Positions 6,400-30,400 of a DNA stretch of 33,000 bases are shown one piece after another. Positions within the stretch are counted from its first letter, which is position 1; the number at the start of each line of letters is the position of its first letter. Below the pieces are notes generated by a model, which saw nothing but the letters and a program-made list of their open reading frames with translations, was not told the DNA's origin and made no database searches. Position numbers and translations under genes: made by a program. Source of the DNA: Dicyema japonicum (taxonomy: Eukaryota; Animalia; Dicyemida); assembly GCA_011109175.1 (NCBI GenBank), contig RDEW01000073.1:59662-92661 (forward strand), given 5' to 3'.

Positions 6400-7700
6400 A
6401 TCAACTATCATTCCTGGAATCACTCGATGTAAACGAAATATTCGACTCGGTATCAAGAAAAATTCATTCAAACCGAATGTTGAATATTAAACTTTTACTG
6501 ATCAACTTCCTGAAAGGAATACAAGTCCACTCGTAAAATGGACTAAATATATTAAACCAAGAATCCTTTTATACAATACGATTATTCAAGTCAATACCAC
6601 GTCAAACAACATGGGAGTCATGTTTGATCAGGGACTTCCTTAGCTAAACATGTGAAAATCAGGAAAAAAATGAAAATCTTAACGATGTAGCTTTCGGAAA
6701 CAATGCTGGATCCCTCTCTACTATCTACAGACAGTTTTCCACCCAGTATTGACATATGCGAGTGCAACGTGGTCAATGACAATTTCTACTCCAGATTCTT
6801 AGAGTAAAGTCGACCAGTATTAATTAACAAACTCTCTCAACGAACACCAATAGACCAGAATTCACAGCAGATGGCGGAGATGGATTACGGTCTTGGAGTT
6901 AGGAGCAGTAGAAAATAGACGTGTGGAAAACCATCCGAAATGTTGCAAAGGGAGAAGAAACCTCCCCCGAGGATGACTATACTCAACGAGACGTTAACAA
7001 TTTGATAAAATTCTACACAAAAATTTCGTACAAGGAACACAGGAAGTCGGGAGTGCTTCTCTCCTCATGGAGAAAACTGAAGAAGGATTCTAACCCAGTT
7101 TACTTCTCGGATGAGGACGTGATGAATGAGCTGCATTTTACAAGAACAACGTACTCTGCCGGTCCCGACAACATTCCAGCAGTGTTATTAAAGAACCTTG
7201 GAGATATTGGAGTCGGTTTTCTAACGTCGGTGTATAACTATTCAATTAATTGTAATGTAATACCGTTGTTATGGAACAAGCCAACATACGACCTATACTG
7301 AAACATGGGAAACCTAAGGAAGATCCAGCATCATTTAGACATGAGTCATTGTTATGTTCATATCGAAAATTCTGGAAAGGCTTGTGCTTGTGAGAATCAA
7401 GGCTTTCTTACCAGATAAGGATTTTCAACACGGATTCAAGAGCGATTGTTATACATCAACGTACCTACAGAAATTAACCAACTTTATTAGAGATGGTTTT
7501 TCAAACAAACCAAGGCATTTGAAGACAGTCTTATGTTCCATTGATATTAACAAGGCCTTTGATTCTATTTCGAGAAAAATACTATCAAAGAAAATTTTCC
7601 AGTCCGAGATCCCGGGGAAGCTTAAACTTTGGATAAAAAATTTCTTAAGTGGACGAAGAGGACATGTATGCCTCGGAGGACTGAAATCATATGTTTTTTA
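6400..7700 (+). mobile_element. APE-type LINE reverse transcriptase remnants (at least two fragments)
   Basis: ORFs 6921-7301 (SAGPDNIP...LKNLG) and 7354-7701 (SKILERLVL, FQHGFK, DGFSNKPRHLKTVLCSIDINKAFDSI) are classic LINE RT motifs. 6420-6790 carries a degenerate RT C-terminal part (GVMFD, LTYASATW). Confidence 0.88.
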
Positions 7701-10029: not shown

Positions 10030-10510
10030 CAGAAGCTTGTCGATTTTAAGATTTTGATAGAATTAATAATTCTTTGTTAAGTTGATAAACTTCTGAATTT
10101 TTAACCTCTCTGCCGTTATCTGAATGCAAAATTGTGGGTGTGCCAAAGTTCATGTATACGTATTCCAAATGGTCTCTAACTTCACTGGATTTTTTTCTCT
10201 CCAGTGCATAGCATCAGGCAAACTTGAGTGAGAATCCATCTCCTCCCATCATTTTGTTCAGAATATAGTCTTATTTATTTGTTAATCCCAGGCTTACAAT
10301 CTTCCGTAAACCCTGCACAAACAGTCACTACTAATTAATCCAAGGAAAGAATCCAAGGAGAACGTCTGCTTGTGCCAACCAAATCCATCCTCCAGCAGTC
10401 CATTACAGGCTTTCGCTTCCAAAGAGAGGTGGATCATGTTGATTCCAGGATGTCCATCTGAATGTTCTTTGATTAAAATTTCCTTAATTTTTTTAAATCT
10501 CAAATTAGCA
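10030..10510 (-). mobile_element. Integrase remnant of Ginger/GIN type (KRBA2/SCAND3-like) or Ty3/gypsy type
   Basis: Minus strand reads KIKEILIKEHSDGHPGIN (start of the HHCC zinc finger) and YALERKKSSEVRDHLEYVYMNFGTPTILHSDNGREVKN (rve core). Confidence 0.75.
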
Positions 10511-19640: not shown

Positions 19641-20250
19641 ACCACACCTATTCAATTCTTAAATGATATGCCCTCCTTACCAGTGACGATACTCTGCTTC
19701 TGACATATACGGATGATATAGTCGTGCGTTAATACTGCTGTTTACCGGATGCAAGCTTCATTGGACGATCTGAACTTTTTTCTCGTTAAGAACATTCTAC
19801 ATACGAGTCCCGAAAAGTCTTATACAACAATTTTCACAACAAACAGAAGATTTATAAACTCCGCTCCATGTGTAACCATAAATGGAAACTCAATCCCCAC
19901 GACCAACTTGGTCAAGGTACTGGGCGTAACTTACGACCCACTCTTTACCTTCAGCAAACACATCGACAACGTCATCTCCTCAAGACAACAAAAGCTAAAT
20001 TTTGTTAAAACACTCCTTGGACAATATAAGGGGCGTTTCAACTTAAATTTGTACTCGCTCTACGTGCACTATATTCAACCGTCTCTAACTTACGAGCGTG
20101 TGCTGCATGGGGAACCAAACTATCAAACGCGAATATGGAAAAAATCAACACATTCCAAAAAATGGCCATTAAGGCTCTGCAAAGATTTTCCCAGACATCT
20201 CTAAACCCTACACAATTTTAGGAGTTAATGAGGAGAATCGAAGCCTTATT
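19640..20250 (+). mobile_element. LINE RT C-terminal fragment
   Basis: TYTDDIV precedes ORF 19749-20204, which reads DDLNFFLVKNILHTSPEKS...KVLGVTYDPLFTFSKHIDNV...YIQPSLTY. Homologous to 10520-11060 on the opposite strand. Confidence 0.88.
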
Positions 20251-22360
20251 ACCCTCCAAAATAGTTAGAAACCCCCGCCCATTCTGGAAATGCGTTGGAT
20301 CCCGGAAAGAACCCGAGCAAAAATGAGATGGCTAGTCGAGGCGGCCGGAATCACATGTAGGCTATGTAGTTATTTAATTTGTCGGTGATTTTTAGTTTTT
20401 AATAATAATTTGTTTTCAGAATAGGATGATCAAGGAATTCTTACTGATACTTTGGAAAACGTGTGTGTTGATAGCATAATTGTACAAGTCCGATACTGCA
20501 GCCTTATCCCCCGGTCGAATTGGAGAGGGGAATTATCTTTTTGTGTAATCTTTGGACCATGGATCAATTGGCCGGTGTAATGGTCGAAAAAATCTGTTAT
20601 ATCATTTCCGCGTTATTAGCTAGTACTTTACAGAGTTCCTTGGCGTGTCTAACATTTCTATTTGCTGTGTCGAAAGTCCTGGAAAAACTCACACTTCCTA
20701 TGTGCCCAAAAAGCAACGTATAGTCTCTTAGCGACGTTGTTCACGGATTATCCCGGAGAAAATTTTTAAGGCCTATTGTCTCTTAGTTGACGAGGCCCTT
20801 TCCATCCGATCAAGATGCCTTCCCCCGGACTAATTCGATGTAGGACGTTGTGCGTCTGCTCAGTTTTGCGCTTTCCGCTCTGGGACTTTCTAGAGATTGT
20901 CACCGAAAGGGGTCTCGCTGTTACCACAAAGAAAAAAATGCATTCTTTTGTGCAATTCACTTTACTGATTGCCCTACTTAGTCTGACCGAATAGGAGATA
21001 CTCGGAATTCGAATTAGGAAGTTGATGTTCTTTGCCTCAAGAACTTCCTTCGAAGGTATTCGTAGGTGGAACCCATGCTTCCATCAAGTCAAACACACAA
21101 CACCGTCTCACAATCCGCAATCCGTCACTTTTTTTCTAAAGTGAGAACCCTTACCCTATCACGTTTTGATATTAAGAAAGTCTCACTTTTACTTCTTTAT
21201 TGGAGATTTAAAAGCCAATTTCGTTTTATTCCACTAACAATTTACAGAAAAAAGCTACTTATCAGATCTAACGTGATTCATCCATACAAGAAGTGTGTCG
21301 CTCTCGGAAGGAACACCGAGAAGGGATGAGGGACTGGTTAAGGAGGTCGAGATCACCTGACGGCCCCCAATCTCTTTATTTTGTCGGTGATACTTGATTT
21401 TAAATAAAATAAATAAAACGTGTGCCGGGACAAATTCCTCTTTTAAAGTTTATTAATCGAAAATCGAGGACAGAGAGGCTATTAGACAAATAAATCAGTG
21501 TAAAGGATGTCCTGTACATATTATTCATGGGAAAATTAAGGAATCAGCAGTAATAGACTGTTCCAAACACGCGAAGTGGGAGTTAAACAAGTACAGAGCA
21601 TTAATGGCTGGGAAACAAAAATAGAATCTTTTTCCAAACTCATGGATCTTGGCCGATTCTGATCTCAGAAGGAGCGAAGTGGAGAAGGTAGTCACACAGA
21701 TTACATCTCAGACCAATGATTTTCCGTTTGAATATGGGCAAAGGGTCATTCTTCTGGTTTCTTGTCATCTCTACAATCCAGTCCAACAGGCTCAAATTGA
21801 GCTGGGAAGCCTGCTGCCTCGAGGGTTTGCAGAATGAGCGACCTGCACTTTTATTTCATCAAATATTGAAGATTAAATTTCATGAGATATATTTCATTAT
21901 TCGAAAAAATTGAAGAATTCGGATCAAACCTCGGACTCTCGTTATAGACCACGTGGCCAGGTTTCAAAGGTTAAAGAGGTCGAAAATTTCAATTTTCATC
22001 GTGAAAATATGATTTTGAGAATTAACTCGTCGTTAGGGCTTACGTGTACAGTTCTCCAATATAGAAGAGGTCGAAAGACTTATATTGGGGATGGCACAGA
22101 TAAAGTGTAGTTAAGACAGCAGACATAATAAAAAACGTAATAGCAAAACTCAGTCATATTCATAAAATAGAGGTAACCTCTTTTTAATCCATTCATCTTC
22201 TTCCTTGTCAAGTGTAGTAGCCAAAATAATCTCCAACTCTGATAAATCAGGGTATTCAAAATTCGGGAATTTAGACAAAATACTAAAATCCCTGGAGAAA
22301 GAACAAGAAGTCTGAGGGGCAGATTGCGGACTATGAGTGAACTGACACGTGGAGAGACGT

Positions 22361-24905
22361 TTAGGGAACGACCAAATCAGGAACAGATCTGTTTCCCAAT
22401 CGTTCACATTGCTGCTGAGTCAGAGTTATTGGTCGTATCTCCACTTGTCTCTGTAACGAACTCCCAAACACTTGTTTGCTATCACTCATGTTTTGCATCC
22501 TCCTACGAAGTTGAGCCTGTTCCCTCATTCTCTTTCTGTCCTGTAGGTCATTCGCCCGTCGTTTGAATACACTGCATAATTTGGCTCCACAATGCTCATT
22601 CGTGCATTCTAACAGGTGGGTCTCGTATATCCTGCCCAGACACTTACACAGTCTACACGTAGTCCTGCTCTGACAGACATTATTGAAATGGTGAGGTAAC
22701 AAATGCTCCTTATACTGAATACACAACACACGTGTGCATGTAGAATCATAACAAAATAGAGTGTGGGACACATTCCCTCTAAAGTCATCTATTTCGGGTC
22801 GAGTCTGTGAGGGGGCATGGGCTCCAACTTCAATGAATCCGTGAGGATGTGACACCGTCTTATAGCACTGTTGACACAAATCAAAGTCCTTGCATCTATT
22901 ACAGCAGACCGTATCTGGGATATCTGAATGTGACAGTTATGACAGTTGTAGGAAAAGAAATGTTTGTGCAGTTCTATCACAAAGGCTTGAGTGGAAAAGA
23001 GAGCTCTTCTTAGAGTCGAGAATTCGTAGTTCCTTTCTCTACAGAAGGTTAGGAAGGCATCCCGACTGTCCACTAGCTCACAGAATAGCTCAGGGTCAGG
23101 GTCACTTATGTTGGTTAAGTGGCAATTTAGACGACTAGAGTGAAGTTCAATCACAAAGAATCCATTCCTGTTCTTCTCCAAAGTCCCCAATAAGTCCTGA
23201 TGAGTGGCATCCTCCTCCAATCTAAGAGGCCAAAAGTCGCCATCCATATAAGGGATTTGTGCGGGGGAGGTGATCCCATTATCATGAGCACAGGCATAGA
23301 TATCCTAAATAAAGACATATTCCACCTGGTACGAACGAATAGCTTTCTGATTAATTGCATTATTAAGCATAATTTTGTACCATTCTATCAGTTTCTTAGC
23401 CGTAGGGGTCTTCTGTTCGAAGGGGTGACAGTAAAATATGTAGTCGTCTCTATCACCAGGGGGACACGCCCATATGTGTACCCAGGCGTAACTTATATAA
23501 CCTTAATCGATACCCCAGTTTGCGGACGTAATCCATGTATGATATCAACAGTTCGTGGAACACCCGGGTACGGAGGAACTTTGGGTGGAAGAAGTGGATG
23601 GAATCGAGGTAGGAGATGTAGACACGACTACAGTAATATGTCCAACAACTACCGTTTATTGGGTTCAGGACACTCAGAGTTGTACTCCTGTGTGTGGAAG
23701 GCAAAGAAACATAGTTCAGAGTTCTCCCTTACTTGGAAGGCATACACCGTTTTGGCTCGATAGGGAAGTTTAACCCCCAGCAACTCCTTCATCCGGGGTT
23801 TTATTTCGCACTCTTTCGACACACATGACAGAACACGCACGTGGATGGTCCCACAATCGATCCCACTGCTCTCAGAACGTAGAAAGGCGTTCACTCTATC
23901 CTCAATGTAAGCCCCTAACTGTGTCTGAGGGATGTCTAGGAATTAAACTGGGGGTTACTTTTTACTGAAAACTTTGTCGGAGTTCCACAACGTGTACTCA
24001 GTGGGGTACAGCTCCTCGTGGTATAGACACACACCTGGTGAAACGAACGACCACACTCTCCACAGTCCACCATCAATTCGGGGTCACGGACGTTGTTCTT
24101 AGAAAGAACAAAGTTCTCCTTGGGGATTGGACTGTCAGCAGCCACAACCCCCTCAGCCGCATTATAGCACCTTAACACAGCACACCTGCTCTCCACAAAC
24201 ATAGTAGTCGGCCTCCCCTCCAATTTGACAACTCAGGGGAGTACAACAGTAAAGGACTTTAAGGTTGTATTGATACTTCTTGGAACAACAGTAACCGAGG
24301 GACTTCATAACAACCTCAGCCTCCTGATAGAACTTTGCGGACAACTTTAATAAGTAAGGGACCGACCCTTTGAGCACATCTGGTCACGTTGTTCTTTGGA
24401 CCATTGTAGAGACGGGCGTTGGAGAATATTAGGTCCACAGTCTCGATCAACTCCCAACCGCTGGAATAGGACCGAGCACGTGCTGTGGATATGTCCATTG
24501 GGTTTTTGATAACTGAGTAATAGTCTTCCGCGAAATCCTTGATAGGATCAACGGGATAACGGAACGGAATTGAGTCTGAGCCGGAATTCCAGAGCATGTC
24601 GAAGACGGGGTCAAATGCCTCTTTGATCTCCGCCGGTGTGATTTCTAAGTGAGAAAAACCGTACTTTTGCATCCCCGCGAACTAGAGCCAGTAGGGCGTT
24701 CCTGTACTCTACCTTGAATAATTAATAGAAGGTACTCTGGATGAAACTGTAGTGAATATTTGTTTTTCTTTAGACGACACCCAGTCACCGCGAACCCTCT
24801 CCACACTACTTGATTACTGCCTCTATACAGCCACTTGACGCACTCCTCCCGTTCGAGAGCACTTATTATTGGTTCCTTCTGACAATCCTCATTTGAAGAG
24901 TCCAT
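22361..24905 (-). CDS. CBP: Miniaturised CBP/p300 (KAT3) histone acetyltransferase: short KIX - bromodomain - RING - PHD - HAT - ZZ - TAZ2, about 790 aa after splicing and indel correction
   Basis: Introns at 24806-24828 (23 nt), 24713-24735 (23), 24645-24664 (20), 24345-24366 (22), 23936-23958 (23), 23628-23652 (25), 23492-23513 (22) and 23305-23325 (21). Motifs include SIPFRYPVDP, KNPMDIST, NARLYN, VMKSLGYCC, CGRSFHQVCV, RRVYISYLDSIHFF, HIWACPP, LIEWYK, GDFWP, EFSTLRRA, CKDFDLCQQCY and QAQLRRRM. Single-base indels are needed near 24670, 24172 and 22908, plus a compensating pair near 24026/23990. The 3' end is uncertain. Confidence 0.95.
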
Positions 24906-28479: not shown

Positions 28480-29410
28480 GTCTAAAATTAGGCCGATAGA
28501 GCGTAAGGGACCCTACTTTTCGAATACACTTGAATTGGAATGACAAAGGATGAGCTCATTGATAATCTTGGGACTATTGCCATTTCTCCCACTTGGAGGT
28601 TAAACAGCTTTCCAAATCTGGCGAAGACTATGAGGGCGATTGGGAAATTGGTATGGGATTTTATTCCTCTTTTCTCGGTTTTCCGCTATCTTAATATGTG
28701 TGGTCATTCAAAGTCCAACGACAGTGGCTTTCAAACTCTTCTAACTTCAATGTAATGAAAGACCCTCGTGGGAACACTTTGGTAAGAGGAATGCAAATTA
28801 TTCTATGCATGAAGGAAGAATCAAAGCATTTTTGAACACTTAAAAGCTGAGGGAACTGATCGAAAAGTATAGTCAGTTTATAAGCTCCCCCATTTACTTG
28901 TAAGGGAAGAGATCGTTGTCTCATATATTTCACCCAAGGACAAGTCATCAGAACAGATGATTGGATCGTGGAATTATGCAAACCCATGAATCTCCTTGGT
29001 TCCTAAGGTTCTCAAATTTATAATAATCAAGTCCCTCTGAGGTTTCAGAGTTGGAAGGTGATATTTCGTCTTCTGCTCTGGTTTATGTACTATCCACCGT
29101 ATTTATCAATACTGAACAAACCAGGGAGTAAAACTAAATCATTTTTGGGTTTCAGCAATTTATATTCTCTTCAGCTCTATACACGAAGAATCTTCATCAC
29201 GGATTCCTTTGGACCCGATGAGTTTATGCCTACATTGAGTTTATAAAATTCCTGGTAATTGTTGTCATTCGAAGATTTTCCTTTGAGTGTCTCCCGAGAA
29301 GCAAATTACTTAAGCTTATCAAATGGAAGCTCAGAAAGAAGATCCTCGATTTGTTAAATCAGCGAAGGAAGACGACCAGCAGAAGATTTGGGAGGCTTTT
29401 TGGAATAGCC
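28480..29410 (+). pseudogene. HSP90B1: Decayed Hsp90-family gene, Grp94/endoplasmin-like
   Basis: IGMTKDELIDNLGTIA, GFYSSF, DPRGNTLVRG, ELIEKYSQF, LYTRRIFITDSF and PLSVSRE. DPRGNTL and FITD are Grp94-type. It has frameshifts and internal deletions, retains tiny introns at 29008-29031 (24 nt) and 29149-29174 (26 nt), and ends at a gag-like remnant. Confidence 0.8.
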
Positions 29411-29419
29411 GAGGATGAA

Positions 29420-30400
29420 CATAATAGGAAATGATTGTCCGAAATCATTCGATTCCCAAGTTCTCTGGACCCAAATCAGCTCACAACGAAAAGTCGAATT
29501 TCAGGCTGTGGACCCACCTCAACCAATGGAGACTAAATCTGCACTCCCGACGACAGTATGCTGGACTACTGTAGGAAGGAAGTGGAAGTCTGCGGTTTTG
29601 GGATAACCGCAAAACGTGTTGGATTCGGGTCAAGAAACCGCAAGTGGCCCTAAGAAGCCATTTGTAATCCCGAATCTTTCCAGAAGGCACGAGCCAAAGA
29701 GGAACTTCAAGGATCAGGTAAAGATGGGACCTACTACAATAGTGAGGCTGGAGGTCCCGAAACTGGAGTCGGTAGTGAAGCGTAGAGAATCCCAGTTGTT
29801 ACTGGGGTTCACAAAGGAGGAAGACGCCTCAGCTTTTGAAGCTGAGGTGAATAAAAAGGTACCTTTTGGGACCGGGACCTATTCATGTCACGGGTCACCC
29901 CTAATGCGAGTGACTCGGTTGTACTAGTCTTCTGAGTCCCTCTGAACTTCGTTAATGAAGATGTACTGAGAAGATCAAACAGGACTTACTCTCGGCACAC
30001 AAGATTGAGCGTTTCACAAGTGGGAAAAGGAAACTACAGACCATGAAGGTCTTGTTACGTTCTGATTCTGAGGCAGAAAGGATCTGTCTTGAAAAAGTAC
30101 GTATTGGTTACTTTAGGTTCGGTCTGGTAAAAGAGCGACCCATACCAATCCAGTACTACAGATGCCAAGGATTCGGCCACATCAGCTTCCGCTGCACTTA
30201 TAAAGAGAAGTGCCTAAATTGCGAGGCCCACATTCGCGGAAGGCCCGTCAGTCAAAAGACAGGTCTCTCAAGTGCGTGAACTGTGGTGAGTAAAAACACA
30301 GGGCGAGCCATACAAGATCCCCCTGTATCAGAAAGCATCGGATAAGGTACTGCACCCTCCTCTGGGATGATTAGTGATGAAGCACTATCCATCGCATGGT
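29420..30400 (+). mobile_element. LINE ORF1 (gag-like) remnant with CCHC zinc knuckles
   Basis: PIQYYRCQGFGHISFRC..KEKCLNCEAH followed in another frame by KCVNCGE, a triple zinc-knuckle arrangement. Upstream reading frames are broken. Confidence 0.78.

What the first reader, a model, noticed from the sequence alone, without database searches (positions are those of the whole stretch)
23170..23250. HAT autoinhibitory loop cleanly deleted
Seen: GDFWPLRLEEDATHQDLLGTLEKNRNGFFVI runs in one exon. Established: in p300 roughly 60 more residues lie between LEE and KLYATMEK, including the lysine-rich loop whose trans-autoacetylation switches the enzyme on. Inference: the enzyme may be constitutively active or regulated only through RING/TAZ2. 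The deletion is in frame and both flanks align, so a single-base sequencing error cannot explain it.
Basis: partly seen in the sequence, partly recalled or inferred. Interest (0 to 1): 0.8.

Follow-up and report, generated by a model that had tools for sequence, protein, structure and literature searches.

The report
Natural p300/CBP enzyme lacking autoinhibitory loop
A tiny-intron parasite (very probably a dicyemid, Dicyema) has an expressed, conserved p300/CBP-type histone acetyltransferase gene in which the lysine-rich loop that switches the human enzyme on and off is missing, giving a natural counterpart of the loop-deleted enzymes made in the laboratory.

Summary
On the minus strand, one exon (23304 down to at least 22350) reads ...PYMDGDFWPLRLEEDATHQDLLGTLEKNRNGFFVIELH. 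Only 22 residues (one lysine) separate GDFWP from FFV. A vertebrate p300 has 85, 47 other homologues have a median of about 93, and none has fewer than 32.

It is not an assembly collapse. Two genomic contigs of the source sample and spliced mRNA contigs from two related species cross the site with no extra bases.

The gene is not dead:
- Its apparent frameshifts are 1-2-base errors of the window assembly; every run laid across each site corrects it.
- The other frame changes are five GT..AG micro-introns of 21-25 nt, and the mRNA contigs remove them.
- 26 of 31 listed differences between the two species fall on third codon positions.
- Catalytic and CoA-binding residues, bromodomain, RING, ZZ and TAZ2 are present.

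The closest relative lies on a contig filed under Octopus sinensis. It has 11 micro-introns, so it is probably dicyemid contamination, and it keeps a 76-residue lysine-rich loop. Fragments of that type occur in the same RNA run as the loop-less type, so the two are probably paralogues.

Constitutive activity is a reasonable inference but untested. I found no paper describing a natural loop-less KAT3. I rate it a new variant of a known kind, of moderate interest.

The parts
23152..23241 (-). The junction: GDFWP, LRLEE, DATH, QDLLGTLEKNRNG, FFV. DATH (23200-23211) stands where p300 residues about 1516-1577 (the autoinhibitory loop) would be.
   Evidence: Contigs of four runs cross it unchanged.
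22350..23304 (-). Last confirmed exon: C-terminal half of the HAT domain, ZZ and TAZ2. After correction the reading frame stays open to the stop at 22150, but below 22350 no reads were laid.
   Evidence: mRNA contigs X5 and X6 remove nothing between 22350 and 23304; corrected ORF.
22955..23935 (-). HAT (KAT11) domain across four exons. Catalytic and CoA-binding residues kept: Y1394, S1396, Y1397, L1398, D1399, S1400, R1410, T1411, H1434, W1436, Y1446, K1456, W1466, Y1467 (human p300 numbering). Changed: Y1414F, R1462K, K1499A.
   Evidence: Pfam HAT_KAT11 on two exon pieces; PDB matches; residue map.
24367..24672 (-). Bromodomain exon; the acetyl-lysine-binding Asn (p300 N1132) is kept.
   Evidence: Pfam PF00439, E 3.5e-13.
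23959..24344 (-). RING_CBP-p300 and PHD region. The RING CxxC is restored once the assembly error at 24170 is corrected. The last PHD Cys pair reads CC instead of CxxC.
   Evidence: Pfam PF06001, E 1.3e-8.
22840..22950 (-). ZZ zinc finger. It is intact (CHNC-x10-CNRC...CQQC) once an A is added behind 22907, as the contigs show.
   Evidence: same spacing as in the L001 protein.
22487..22777 (-). TAZ2 with three HCCC motifs.
   Evidence: Match to p300 TAZ2 structure 3io2, E 0.001.
24345..24366 (-). Micro-intron, 22 nt, GT..AG.
   Evidence: Predicted; left out in mRNA contigs X5 and X6.
23936..23958 (-). Micro-intron, 23 nt, GTAA..TAG.
   Evidence: Read; left out in X5. For X6 this is inferred from gap bookkeeping.
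23628..23652 (-). Micro-intron, 25 nt, GT..AG.
   Evidence: Read; left out in X5 and X6.
23492..23513 (-). Micro-intron, 22 nt, GT..AG.
   Evidence: left out in X5 and X6.
23305..23325 (-). Micro-intron, 21 nt, GT..AG, in frame and holding a TAG. It sits at the same position as a 25-nt intron of the sister gene on L001.
   Evidence: left out in X5 and X6.
24682..24707 (-). Probable further intron (26 nt) just upstream of the bromodomain exon. The N-terminus is unresolved: the start is Met at 24672 or Met near 24905.
   Evidence: X5 lacks 19 letters in the last bin of the laid stretch; sequence read. Organism B seems not to splice here.

Best explanation
The window holds a functional, expressed KAT3 (p300/CBP-family) acetyltransferase gene of an animal with micro-introns, very probably a dicyemid such as Dicyema japonicum. 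The protein is a compact 'core only' enzyme: bromodomain, RING, PHD, HAT, ZZ and TAZ2, about 800-900 residues, with no TAZ1 or KIX detected. The whole lysine-rich autoinhibitory loop of the HAT domain (p300 1520-1581) has been lost by an in-frame genomic deletion, leaving a four-residue connector.

Shown: the loss is real in DNA and mRNA, is shared by two species, and sits in a gene under purifying selection with its catalytic residues intact.

Inferred: because the pseudo-substrate that blocks the active site until it is acetylated in trans is gone, the enzyme should lack the autoacetylation-dependent activation step, and also the loop's RNA binding and its bromodomain-acetyl-loop contacts. 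Control would then be left to recruitment and occlusion through bromodomain, RING, ZZ and TAZ2, and to expression level.

A sister gene with an intact lysine-rich loop probably coexists as a paralogue, so this looks like a division of labour rather than loss of loop control from the organism.
For: - Junction and spacing.
- No insert in two genomic contigs, in an independent-study mRNA contig (X5) or in a second-species mRNA contig (X6); all gap letters are accounted for.
- Five predicted GT..AG introns of 21-25 nt are removed in those mRNA contigs.
- All apparent frameshifts match corrections shown by the contigs; after correction and splicing there is one open frame of 907 codons.
- 26 of 31 listed A-versus-B differences fall on third codon positions, binomial p about 1e-8.
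- Catalytic, CoA-binding and acidic substrate-pocket residues are kept: and direct reading.
- Domains.
- Sister gene L001 has a 76-residue loop and forms a clade with the window protein at 100 SH-aLRT.
- L001-type motifs (RNMGF, HSHPSQQKIP) occur in a second contig of the same RNA run as the loop-less type.
- Role of the loop in p300/CBP: PMC12547938, PMC8322156.
- Introns under 30 nt in animals are reported only from dicyemids and myxobolid myxozoans: PMC13644364.
- Genome features fit D. japonicum: PMC6736024.
Against: - No enzymology. PMC10475075 notes that some studies found deletion of the loop or RING impairs, rather than raises, substrate acetylation, so 'constitutively active' may be wrong.
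- The connector is 6 residues shorter than the linker in the crystallised loop-deleted cores, and no structure prediction could be run to show it closes without strain.
- The last PHD Cys pair is degenerate.
- The N-terminus and the 3' end below 22350 are unresolved.
- Paralogy rests on short loose-end sequences from one run; pooled parasites could be a species mixture.
- Organism names were coded, so the dicyemid assignment is an inference.
Confidence: 0.8

Rival explanations
1. Assembly collapse or misjoin: the loop-coding bases exist in the genome but were dropped by the assembler.
For: The window assembly does contain errors in this gene: indels of one, two and five bases at 22362, 22907, 23989, 24026, 24170 and 24672.
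Against: Short-read genomic contigs X1 and X2, and mRNA contigs from an independent study (X5) and from another species (X6), cross 23150-23250 without any insertion. Every gap letter in those alignments is accounted for elsewhere. X1 and X2 may come from the same sample as the assembly, but X5 and X6 do not.
Confidence: 0.02
2. Decaying pseudogene or retrocopy: the loop loss is one lesion among many (frameshifts, lost Cys pair) in a dead copy.
For: At first reading the frame changes about eight times between 25000 and 22300, with stops between blocks. The gene has fewer introns than its sister gene. The last PHD Cys pair is lost.
Against: Five frame changes are GT..AG micro-introns removed in mRNA. 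The others are assembly errors corrected in the contigs of every run laid across each site. After correction the frame is open for 907 codons. The gene is transcribed in two species. Differences between the species fall on third codon positions (26 of 31). Catalytic residues are intact.
Confidence: 0.04
3. The loop-less protein is an intact enzyme but not a freely active one: without the loop it is weakly active or acts mainly as a scaffold or reader, while the loop-bearing paralogue does the regulated acetylation.
For: PMC10475075 cites studies in which loop or RING deletion impaired histone and p53 acetylation. The connector is very short. Y1414F, R1462K and K1499A substitutions are present. 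A loop-bearing sister gene exists.
Against: The general-acid Tyr, the Trp that guides the lysine, D1399 and the CoA-binding residues are all kept under purifying selection. Crystallised loop-deleted cores are folded; as I recall, and did not check here, they are also active enzymes.
Confidence: 0.14

Closest known systems
Human p300/CBP catalytic core (KAT3A/KAT3B)
   Same: Same order of bromodomain, RING, PHD, HAT, ZZ and TAZ2. The catalytic, CoA-binding and acidic substrate-pocket residues are the same. The flanks of the loop align residue for residue.
   Different: No autoinhibitory loop (22 against 85 residues between GDFWP and FFV; 1 lysine in that stretch). K1499 is Ala. No TAZ1, KIX or NCBD was detected and the mRNA is only about 2.6 kb. 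The last PHD Cys pair is degenerate.
Engineered loop-deleted p300/CBP cores used for crystallography and assays (e.g. 4bhw, 5u7g, 8cnb; the delta-AIL constructs of PMC8322156)
   Same: They are the best PDB matches, and the loop is removed at the same boundaries. This natural protein is in effect such a construct.
   Different: It arose naturally and is 6 residues shorter than the artificial linker. It is fixed in at least two species and kept under selection.
Sister KAT3 gene on Octopus sinensis contig VCDQ01001334.1 (L001; partly modelled as XP_029655242.1)
   Same: Sister in the tree (100 SH-aLRT). 55% identity in the HAT domain and 48% overall. Micro-introns at five shared positions. Same core architecture.
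   Different: It keeps a 76-residue loop with an acidic first half and a lysine-rich second half, split by a 28-nt intron. It has 11 introns where the window gene has 5. It keeps the last PHD CxxC pair.
Other KAT3 homologues with short loops: P0100 (transcript contig of SRR18067501, organism unknown) and P0127 (a EukProt record)
   Same: The spacing from GDFWP to FFV is reduced to 32 and 50 residues. P0100's stretch is also lysine-poor, with 2 Lys.
   Different: They are not close relatives (for P0100). Their loops are shortened, not absent. P0100 keeps TAZ1 and KIX.

Membership tests
KAT3 (p300/CBP) acetyltransferases | HAT_KAT11 domain with the p300 catalytic set (Y1467, W1436, D1399, H1434, R1410/T1411, Y1394-S1400 strand) | tested here: met
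   Pfam PF08214 on two exon pieces. PDB p300/CBP cores at E about 1e-28. All listed residues identical.
KAT3 (p300/CBP) acetyltransferases | Bromodomain followed by the atypical RING inserted in a PHD finger, directly before the HAT domain | tested here: met
   PF00439 and PF06001. The order is seen. The last PHD Cys pair is degenerate (CC).
KAT3 (p300/CBP) acetyltransferases | ZZ and TAZ2 zinc modules directly after the HAT domain | tested here: met
   ZZ Cys spacing is restored by the contig-supported correction at 22907. TAZ2 matches 3io2 at E 0.001 with three HCCC motifs. Pfam gave no hit on these pieces at E 0.01.
KAT3 (p300/CBP) acetyltransferases | Lysine-rich autoinhibitory/autoacetylation loop inside the HAT domain | tested here: not met
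   22 residues with 1 Lys, against a median of about 93 in 47 homologues, including choanoflagellate, flatworm, rotifer, crinoid and vertebrate proteins. This is a regulatory feature, not a fold-defining one, so family membership stands.
KAT3 (p300/CBP) acetyltransferases | N-terminal TAZ1 and KIX, and C-terminal NCBD/IBiD transcription-factor docking domains (metazoan type) | tested here: inconclusive
   tblastn with five homologues found nothing upstream of the bromodomain in the window. The mRNA contigs are only about 2.6 kb. Divergent or distant exons cannot be excluded.
KAT3 (p300/CBP) acetyltransferases | Acetyl-CoA-dependent lysine acetyltransferase activity | not testable with these tools
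   Needs recombinant protein.
Dicyemid nuclear genes | Spliceosomal GT..AG introns under about 30 nt, in a repeat-rich genome of about 37% GC | tested here: met
   Five confirmed introns of 21-25 nt. Window GC is 37.7%. RT fragment present. Literature. Myxobolid myxozoans share the intron trait, so the assignment also leans on the sister gene lying in an octopus assembly.

The most novel reading that the evidence does not exclude
Dicyemids carry two KAT3 paralogues that have split the p300 switch between them. The loop-less enzyme would be an always-open 'starter' acetyltransferase that acetylates, in trans, the lysine-rich loop of its loop-bearing partner. This would replace the transcription-factor-dimerisation trigger used in other animals, a rewiring that might go with the extreme reduction of cell number and gene content.
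Probability: 0.12. Interest if true: 0.75.

Novelty: new variant of a known kind. Interest (0 to 1): 0.55.

Why it matters
The autoinhibitory loop is central to current models of p300/CBP control: trans-autoacetylation after transcription-factor dimerisation, enhancer-RNA stimulation, bromodomain feedback and condensate formation. Papers disagree on what deleting it does.

Here evolution has made that deletion in an animal enzyme, fixed it, and kept it under selection, probably next to a sister gene that retains the loop. This gives a matched natural pair for testing what the loop is needed for. It also shows that a metazoan can run a KAT3 enzyme without it.

As a side result, a 382-kb contig of a public Octopus sinensis assembly, and at least one RefSeq 'octopus' protein on it, are probably dicyemid.

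Tried and rejected
- Retrocopy or pseudogene: this was my first reading of the many frame changes. I rejected it once the contigs showed micro-introns and assembly errors.
- Flatworm origin: considered because flatworms have small introns. Rejected because the flatworm KAT3 proteins are distant and have loops of about 98-100 residues.
- A 19-nt GC..AG intron in the RING and 20-nt introns in the ZZ: rejected. Both sites are single-base assembly errors.
- An apparent second frame in the PHD region: explained by the +C at 24026 and +AC at 23989 corrections.
- The search for homologous proteins with P0003 found only P0003 itself. The protein collection holds neither type from the parasite runs, so it could not settle paralogy.
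- Four literature searches for a natural loop-less KAT3, or for conservation of the loop, found nothing relevant.
- The search of earlier findings never opened.
- Structure prediction was not run. The spliced, corrected protein has no reference and may not be pasted, and a single-exon fragment would not give a meaningful model.
- Pfam gave no hit at E 0.01 for the junction exon or for the ZZ/TAZ2 exon piece taken alone.

Full report
**1. What is at the coordinates**

The finding lies on the minus strand. ORF 22789-23247 reads MDGDFWPLRLEEDATHQDLLGTLEKNRNGFFVIELH.... Around it, from about 24700 down to 22350, lie blocks that match a p300/CBP bromodomain, RING/PHD, HAT, ZZ and TAZ2.

A PDB search with the junction exon gives p300/CBP catalytic cores at E 1e-28 to 1e-22. 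The top matches are the engineered loop-deleted constructs (8cnb, 5u7g, 4bhw). They align across the junction with only a 6-residue gap at their artificial linker.

Between GDFWP and FFV there are 22 residues here. The vertebrate p300 P0040 has 85. Across 47 homologues from a 1.8-billion-protein representative search the median is about 93, and the next shortest are 32 (P0100) and 50 (P0127). The named homologues include choanoflagellate-cluster, schistosome, tapeworm, rotifer, crinoid, mite and fish proteins.

I mapped the region onto human numbering. The HAT motifs of P0040 sit at a constant offset of 212 from the human numbering as I recall it. On that map the missing part is about p300 1516-1577, essentially the autoinhibitory loop (1520-1581). 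The remnant has one lysine, and K1499 is Ala.

**2. Gene structure: micro-introns and assembly errors, not decay**

The reading frame changes repeatedly along the gene, which at first looked like a pseudogene. Inspection showed two causes.

- Several changes are GT..AG inserts of 21-25 nt whose removal gives gap-free alignment to p300.
- Two others, in the RING and the ZZ, looked like single-base indels.

Laying public contigs on 22350-24700 settled it. One 2624-nt contig from an independent 2017 study (X5), and one 2600-nt contig from a related organism at about 93% identity (X6), leave out 22 nt at 24345, 25 at 23628, 22 at 23492 and 21 at 23304. X5 also leaves out 23 nt at 23936; for X6 that one follows only from the gap bookkeeping in part 3. 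These contigs are therefore spliced mRNAs.

The contigs of every run laid across each site correct the window there:

| Place | Correction | Effect |
|---|---|---|
| 22907 | +A | restores ZZ spacing CHNC-x10-CNRC |
| 24170 | one base left out | restores the RING CVKC |
| 24026 | +C | PHD region |
| 23989 | +AC (listed for X2 only) | PHD region |
| 24672 | +C | just upstream of the bromodomain exon |
| 22362 | +AGCAG | extends the open frame at the 3' end |

With these corrections and the five introns removed, one frame is open for 907 codons.

**3. Is the junction real?**

Genomic contigs cross 23150-23250: X1 record 2 (22365-23700, 2 gap letters) and X2 record 6 (22350-23548, 6 gap letters, all explained by the 22362 and 22907 corrections).

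For the mRNA contigs the gap letters can be fully accounted for.

- X5: 142 gap letters = 113 intron letters + 19 at the stretch end + 1 deleted + 9 inserted.
- X6: 123 gap letters = 113 intron letters + 1 deleted + 9 inserted.

Neither leaves room for a 160-190-base insert. The loop is therefore absent in DNA and mRNA, and in two species.

X1 and X2 may be the sample the window was assembled from. X5 and X6 are independent of it. All four runs were available only as contigs, not raw reads.

**4. Is the gene alive?**

- It is transcribed in two species.
- Of the 31 listed differences between organism A and organism B, 26 fall on third codon positions (binomial p about 1e-8).
- Y1394, S1396, Y1397, L1398, D1399, S1400, R1410, T1411, H1434, W1436, Y1446, K1456, W1466 and Y1467 are identical to p300. 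Y1414F and R1462K are conservative changes.
- The acidic pocket motif D-x-R-D and the RING-contacting L-R-R are present (direct reading).
- The bromodomain Asn is kept.
- One oddity: the last PHD Cys pair reads CC rather than CxxC.
- No TAZ1 or KIX was found in the window and the mRNA contigs are only about 2.6 kb. The protein is probably a bare catalytic core, but the N-terminus is unresolved.

**5. Whose gene is it?**

Introns under 30 nt in animals are reported only from dicyemids and myxobolid myxozoans (PMC13644364). The window is 37.7% GC and full of retroelement debris. The holder runs date from 2017 and 2019. The small indel errors I saw would fit a hybrid long-read and short-read assembly. 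All of this fits the published Dicyema japonicum genome: 67.5 Mb, 36.7% GC, 49% repeats, assembled from PacBio RS II plus Illumina data (PMC6736024).

Organism names were coded, so this assignment is an inference. I put it at about 85%.

**6. The sister gene**

The closest protein in the databases is XP_029655242.1, 'CREBBP-like [Octopus sinensis]' (P0003). Its locus is L001, on contig VCDQ01001334.1. The locus encodes a full bromodomain-to-TAZ2 gene with 11 GT/GC..AG introns of 22-30 nt. The contig is therefore most likely dicyemid DNA inside the octopus assembly. The NCBI gene model wrongly skips 10094-10302.

In a tree of HAT domains the window protein and the L001 protein are sisters (100 SH-aLRT). 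They share a long stem and each has a long terminal branch. Identity is 55% in the HAT domain and 48% overall. Five intron positions are shared.

L001 keeps a 76-residue loop with an acidic first half and a lysine-rich second half (...KRPNSKTEAKKSKKTKSKIRRK...), split by a 28-nt intron. So the common ancestor had the loop, and the window lineage lost it, along with about half of its introns.

**7. Paralogue or orthologue?**

Organism B's RNA run holds the loop-less type (record 10). It also holds a second contig (record 11) whose flanking letters encode RNMGF and HSHPSQQKIP. Those are L001-type motifs; L001 has KRNMGF and HSHPPEQKMP, while the window has RKLGYAW and YCHPFEQKTP.

The two types differ far more (about 1.2 changes per site) than organisms A and B do in the loop-less gene (about 7% of bases). 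They are therefore probably paralogues, at about 70-75%. A mixed-species sample is not excluded.

The DNA run X2 also holds a further window-like HAT contig at one third of the depth (record 7). I could not explain it.

**8. Mechanism**

In p300/CBP the hypoacetylated loop acts as a pseudo-substrate that blocks the substrate site. Trans-autoacetylation releases it and raises activity 4- to 10-fold. The loop also binds enhancer RNA and, once acetylated, the bromodomain, and it contributes to condensates (PMC12547938; PMC8322156).

An enzyme without the loop should lack all of these controls. It would then be governed by recruitment and by RING/TAZ2 occlusion (PMC10475075). This part is inference. 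The same paper warns that the effects of loop deletion are context dependent.

**9. Verdict**

- The finding is a natural, selected, loop-less KAT3 enzyme, probably one of two paralogues in dicyemids.
- I found no paper describing such a case, within the limits of the held library.
- I rate it a new variant of a known kind, interest about 0.55.

Noticed in passing
window 22362, 22907, 23989, 24026, 24170, 24672: The window assembly has small indel errors inside this one gene (+AGCAG, +A, +AC, +C, one base too many, +C), corrected by short-read and mRNA contigs. Other genes of this assembly may look frameshifted for the same reason.
   Followed up: yes
L001:8500-11900 (Octopus sinensis GCA_006345805.1, contig VCDQ01001334.1, about 203-225 kb): A KAT3 gene with 11 introns of 22-30 nt sits on a 382-kb contig filed as octopus. 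This is probably dicyemid contamination, annotated as octopus protein XP_029655242.1, whose gene model skips the exon with GDFWP (10094-10302).
   Followed up: partly
window 23399-23493 and 23650-23708 (run X2, record 7, 4339 nt): The same DNA sample holds a second, window-like HAT sequence (about 82-92% identical in the two most conserved stretches, 155 unalignable letters between, one third of the depth). It encodes KRLIEWYKV and FQVRGGREL. It could be a third KAT3 copy or a co-infecting species.
   Followed up: partly
window 23434-23472 (run X6, record 11, 1542 nt): Organism B's RNA run holds an L001-type KAT3 transcript fragment (RNMGF..., HSHPSQQKIP) beside the loop-less type. This is the main hint that the two types are paralogues.
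   Followed up: partly
L002 (Logan contig of SRR18067501), protein P0100: A full-length KAT3 (TAZ1, KIX, bromodomain, RING, PHD, HAT, TAZ2) from an unknown organism has only 32 lysine-poor residues between DYWP and FFV. It is a second, unrelated case of a strongly reduced loop, and sits on a long branch near arthropod-like sequences.
   Followed up: partly
window 23959-24040: After correction the PHD finger ends ...EYTCCGTPTKF. The last CxxC zinc-ligand pair of p300 (CDGC; CKEC in L001) is CC here.
   Followed up: no
window 22350-24700 versus L001:8500-10310: Over the same coding span the window gene has 5 introns and the sister gene 11. Five positions are shared, so the loop-less copy has also lost about half of its introns.
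   Followed up: partly
window 7354-7698 (+), also 6921-7301, 19749-20204, 30043-30279: Reverse-transcriptase (RVT_1, E 5e-9) and other retroelement-like ORF fragments are scattered through the window, in line with a LINE-rich genome.
   Followed up: partly
window 28540-28752 (+): A short ORF (MTKDELIDNLGTIA...) weakly resembles the HSP90 N-terminal domain. All top PDB hits are HSP90-family, but E is only 0.07-0.1. It may be an exon of an HSP90-family gene.
   Followed up: partly
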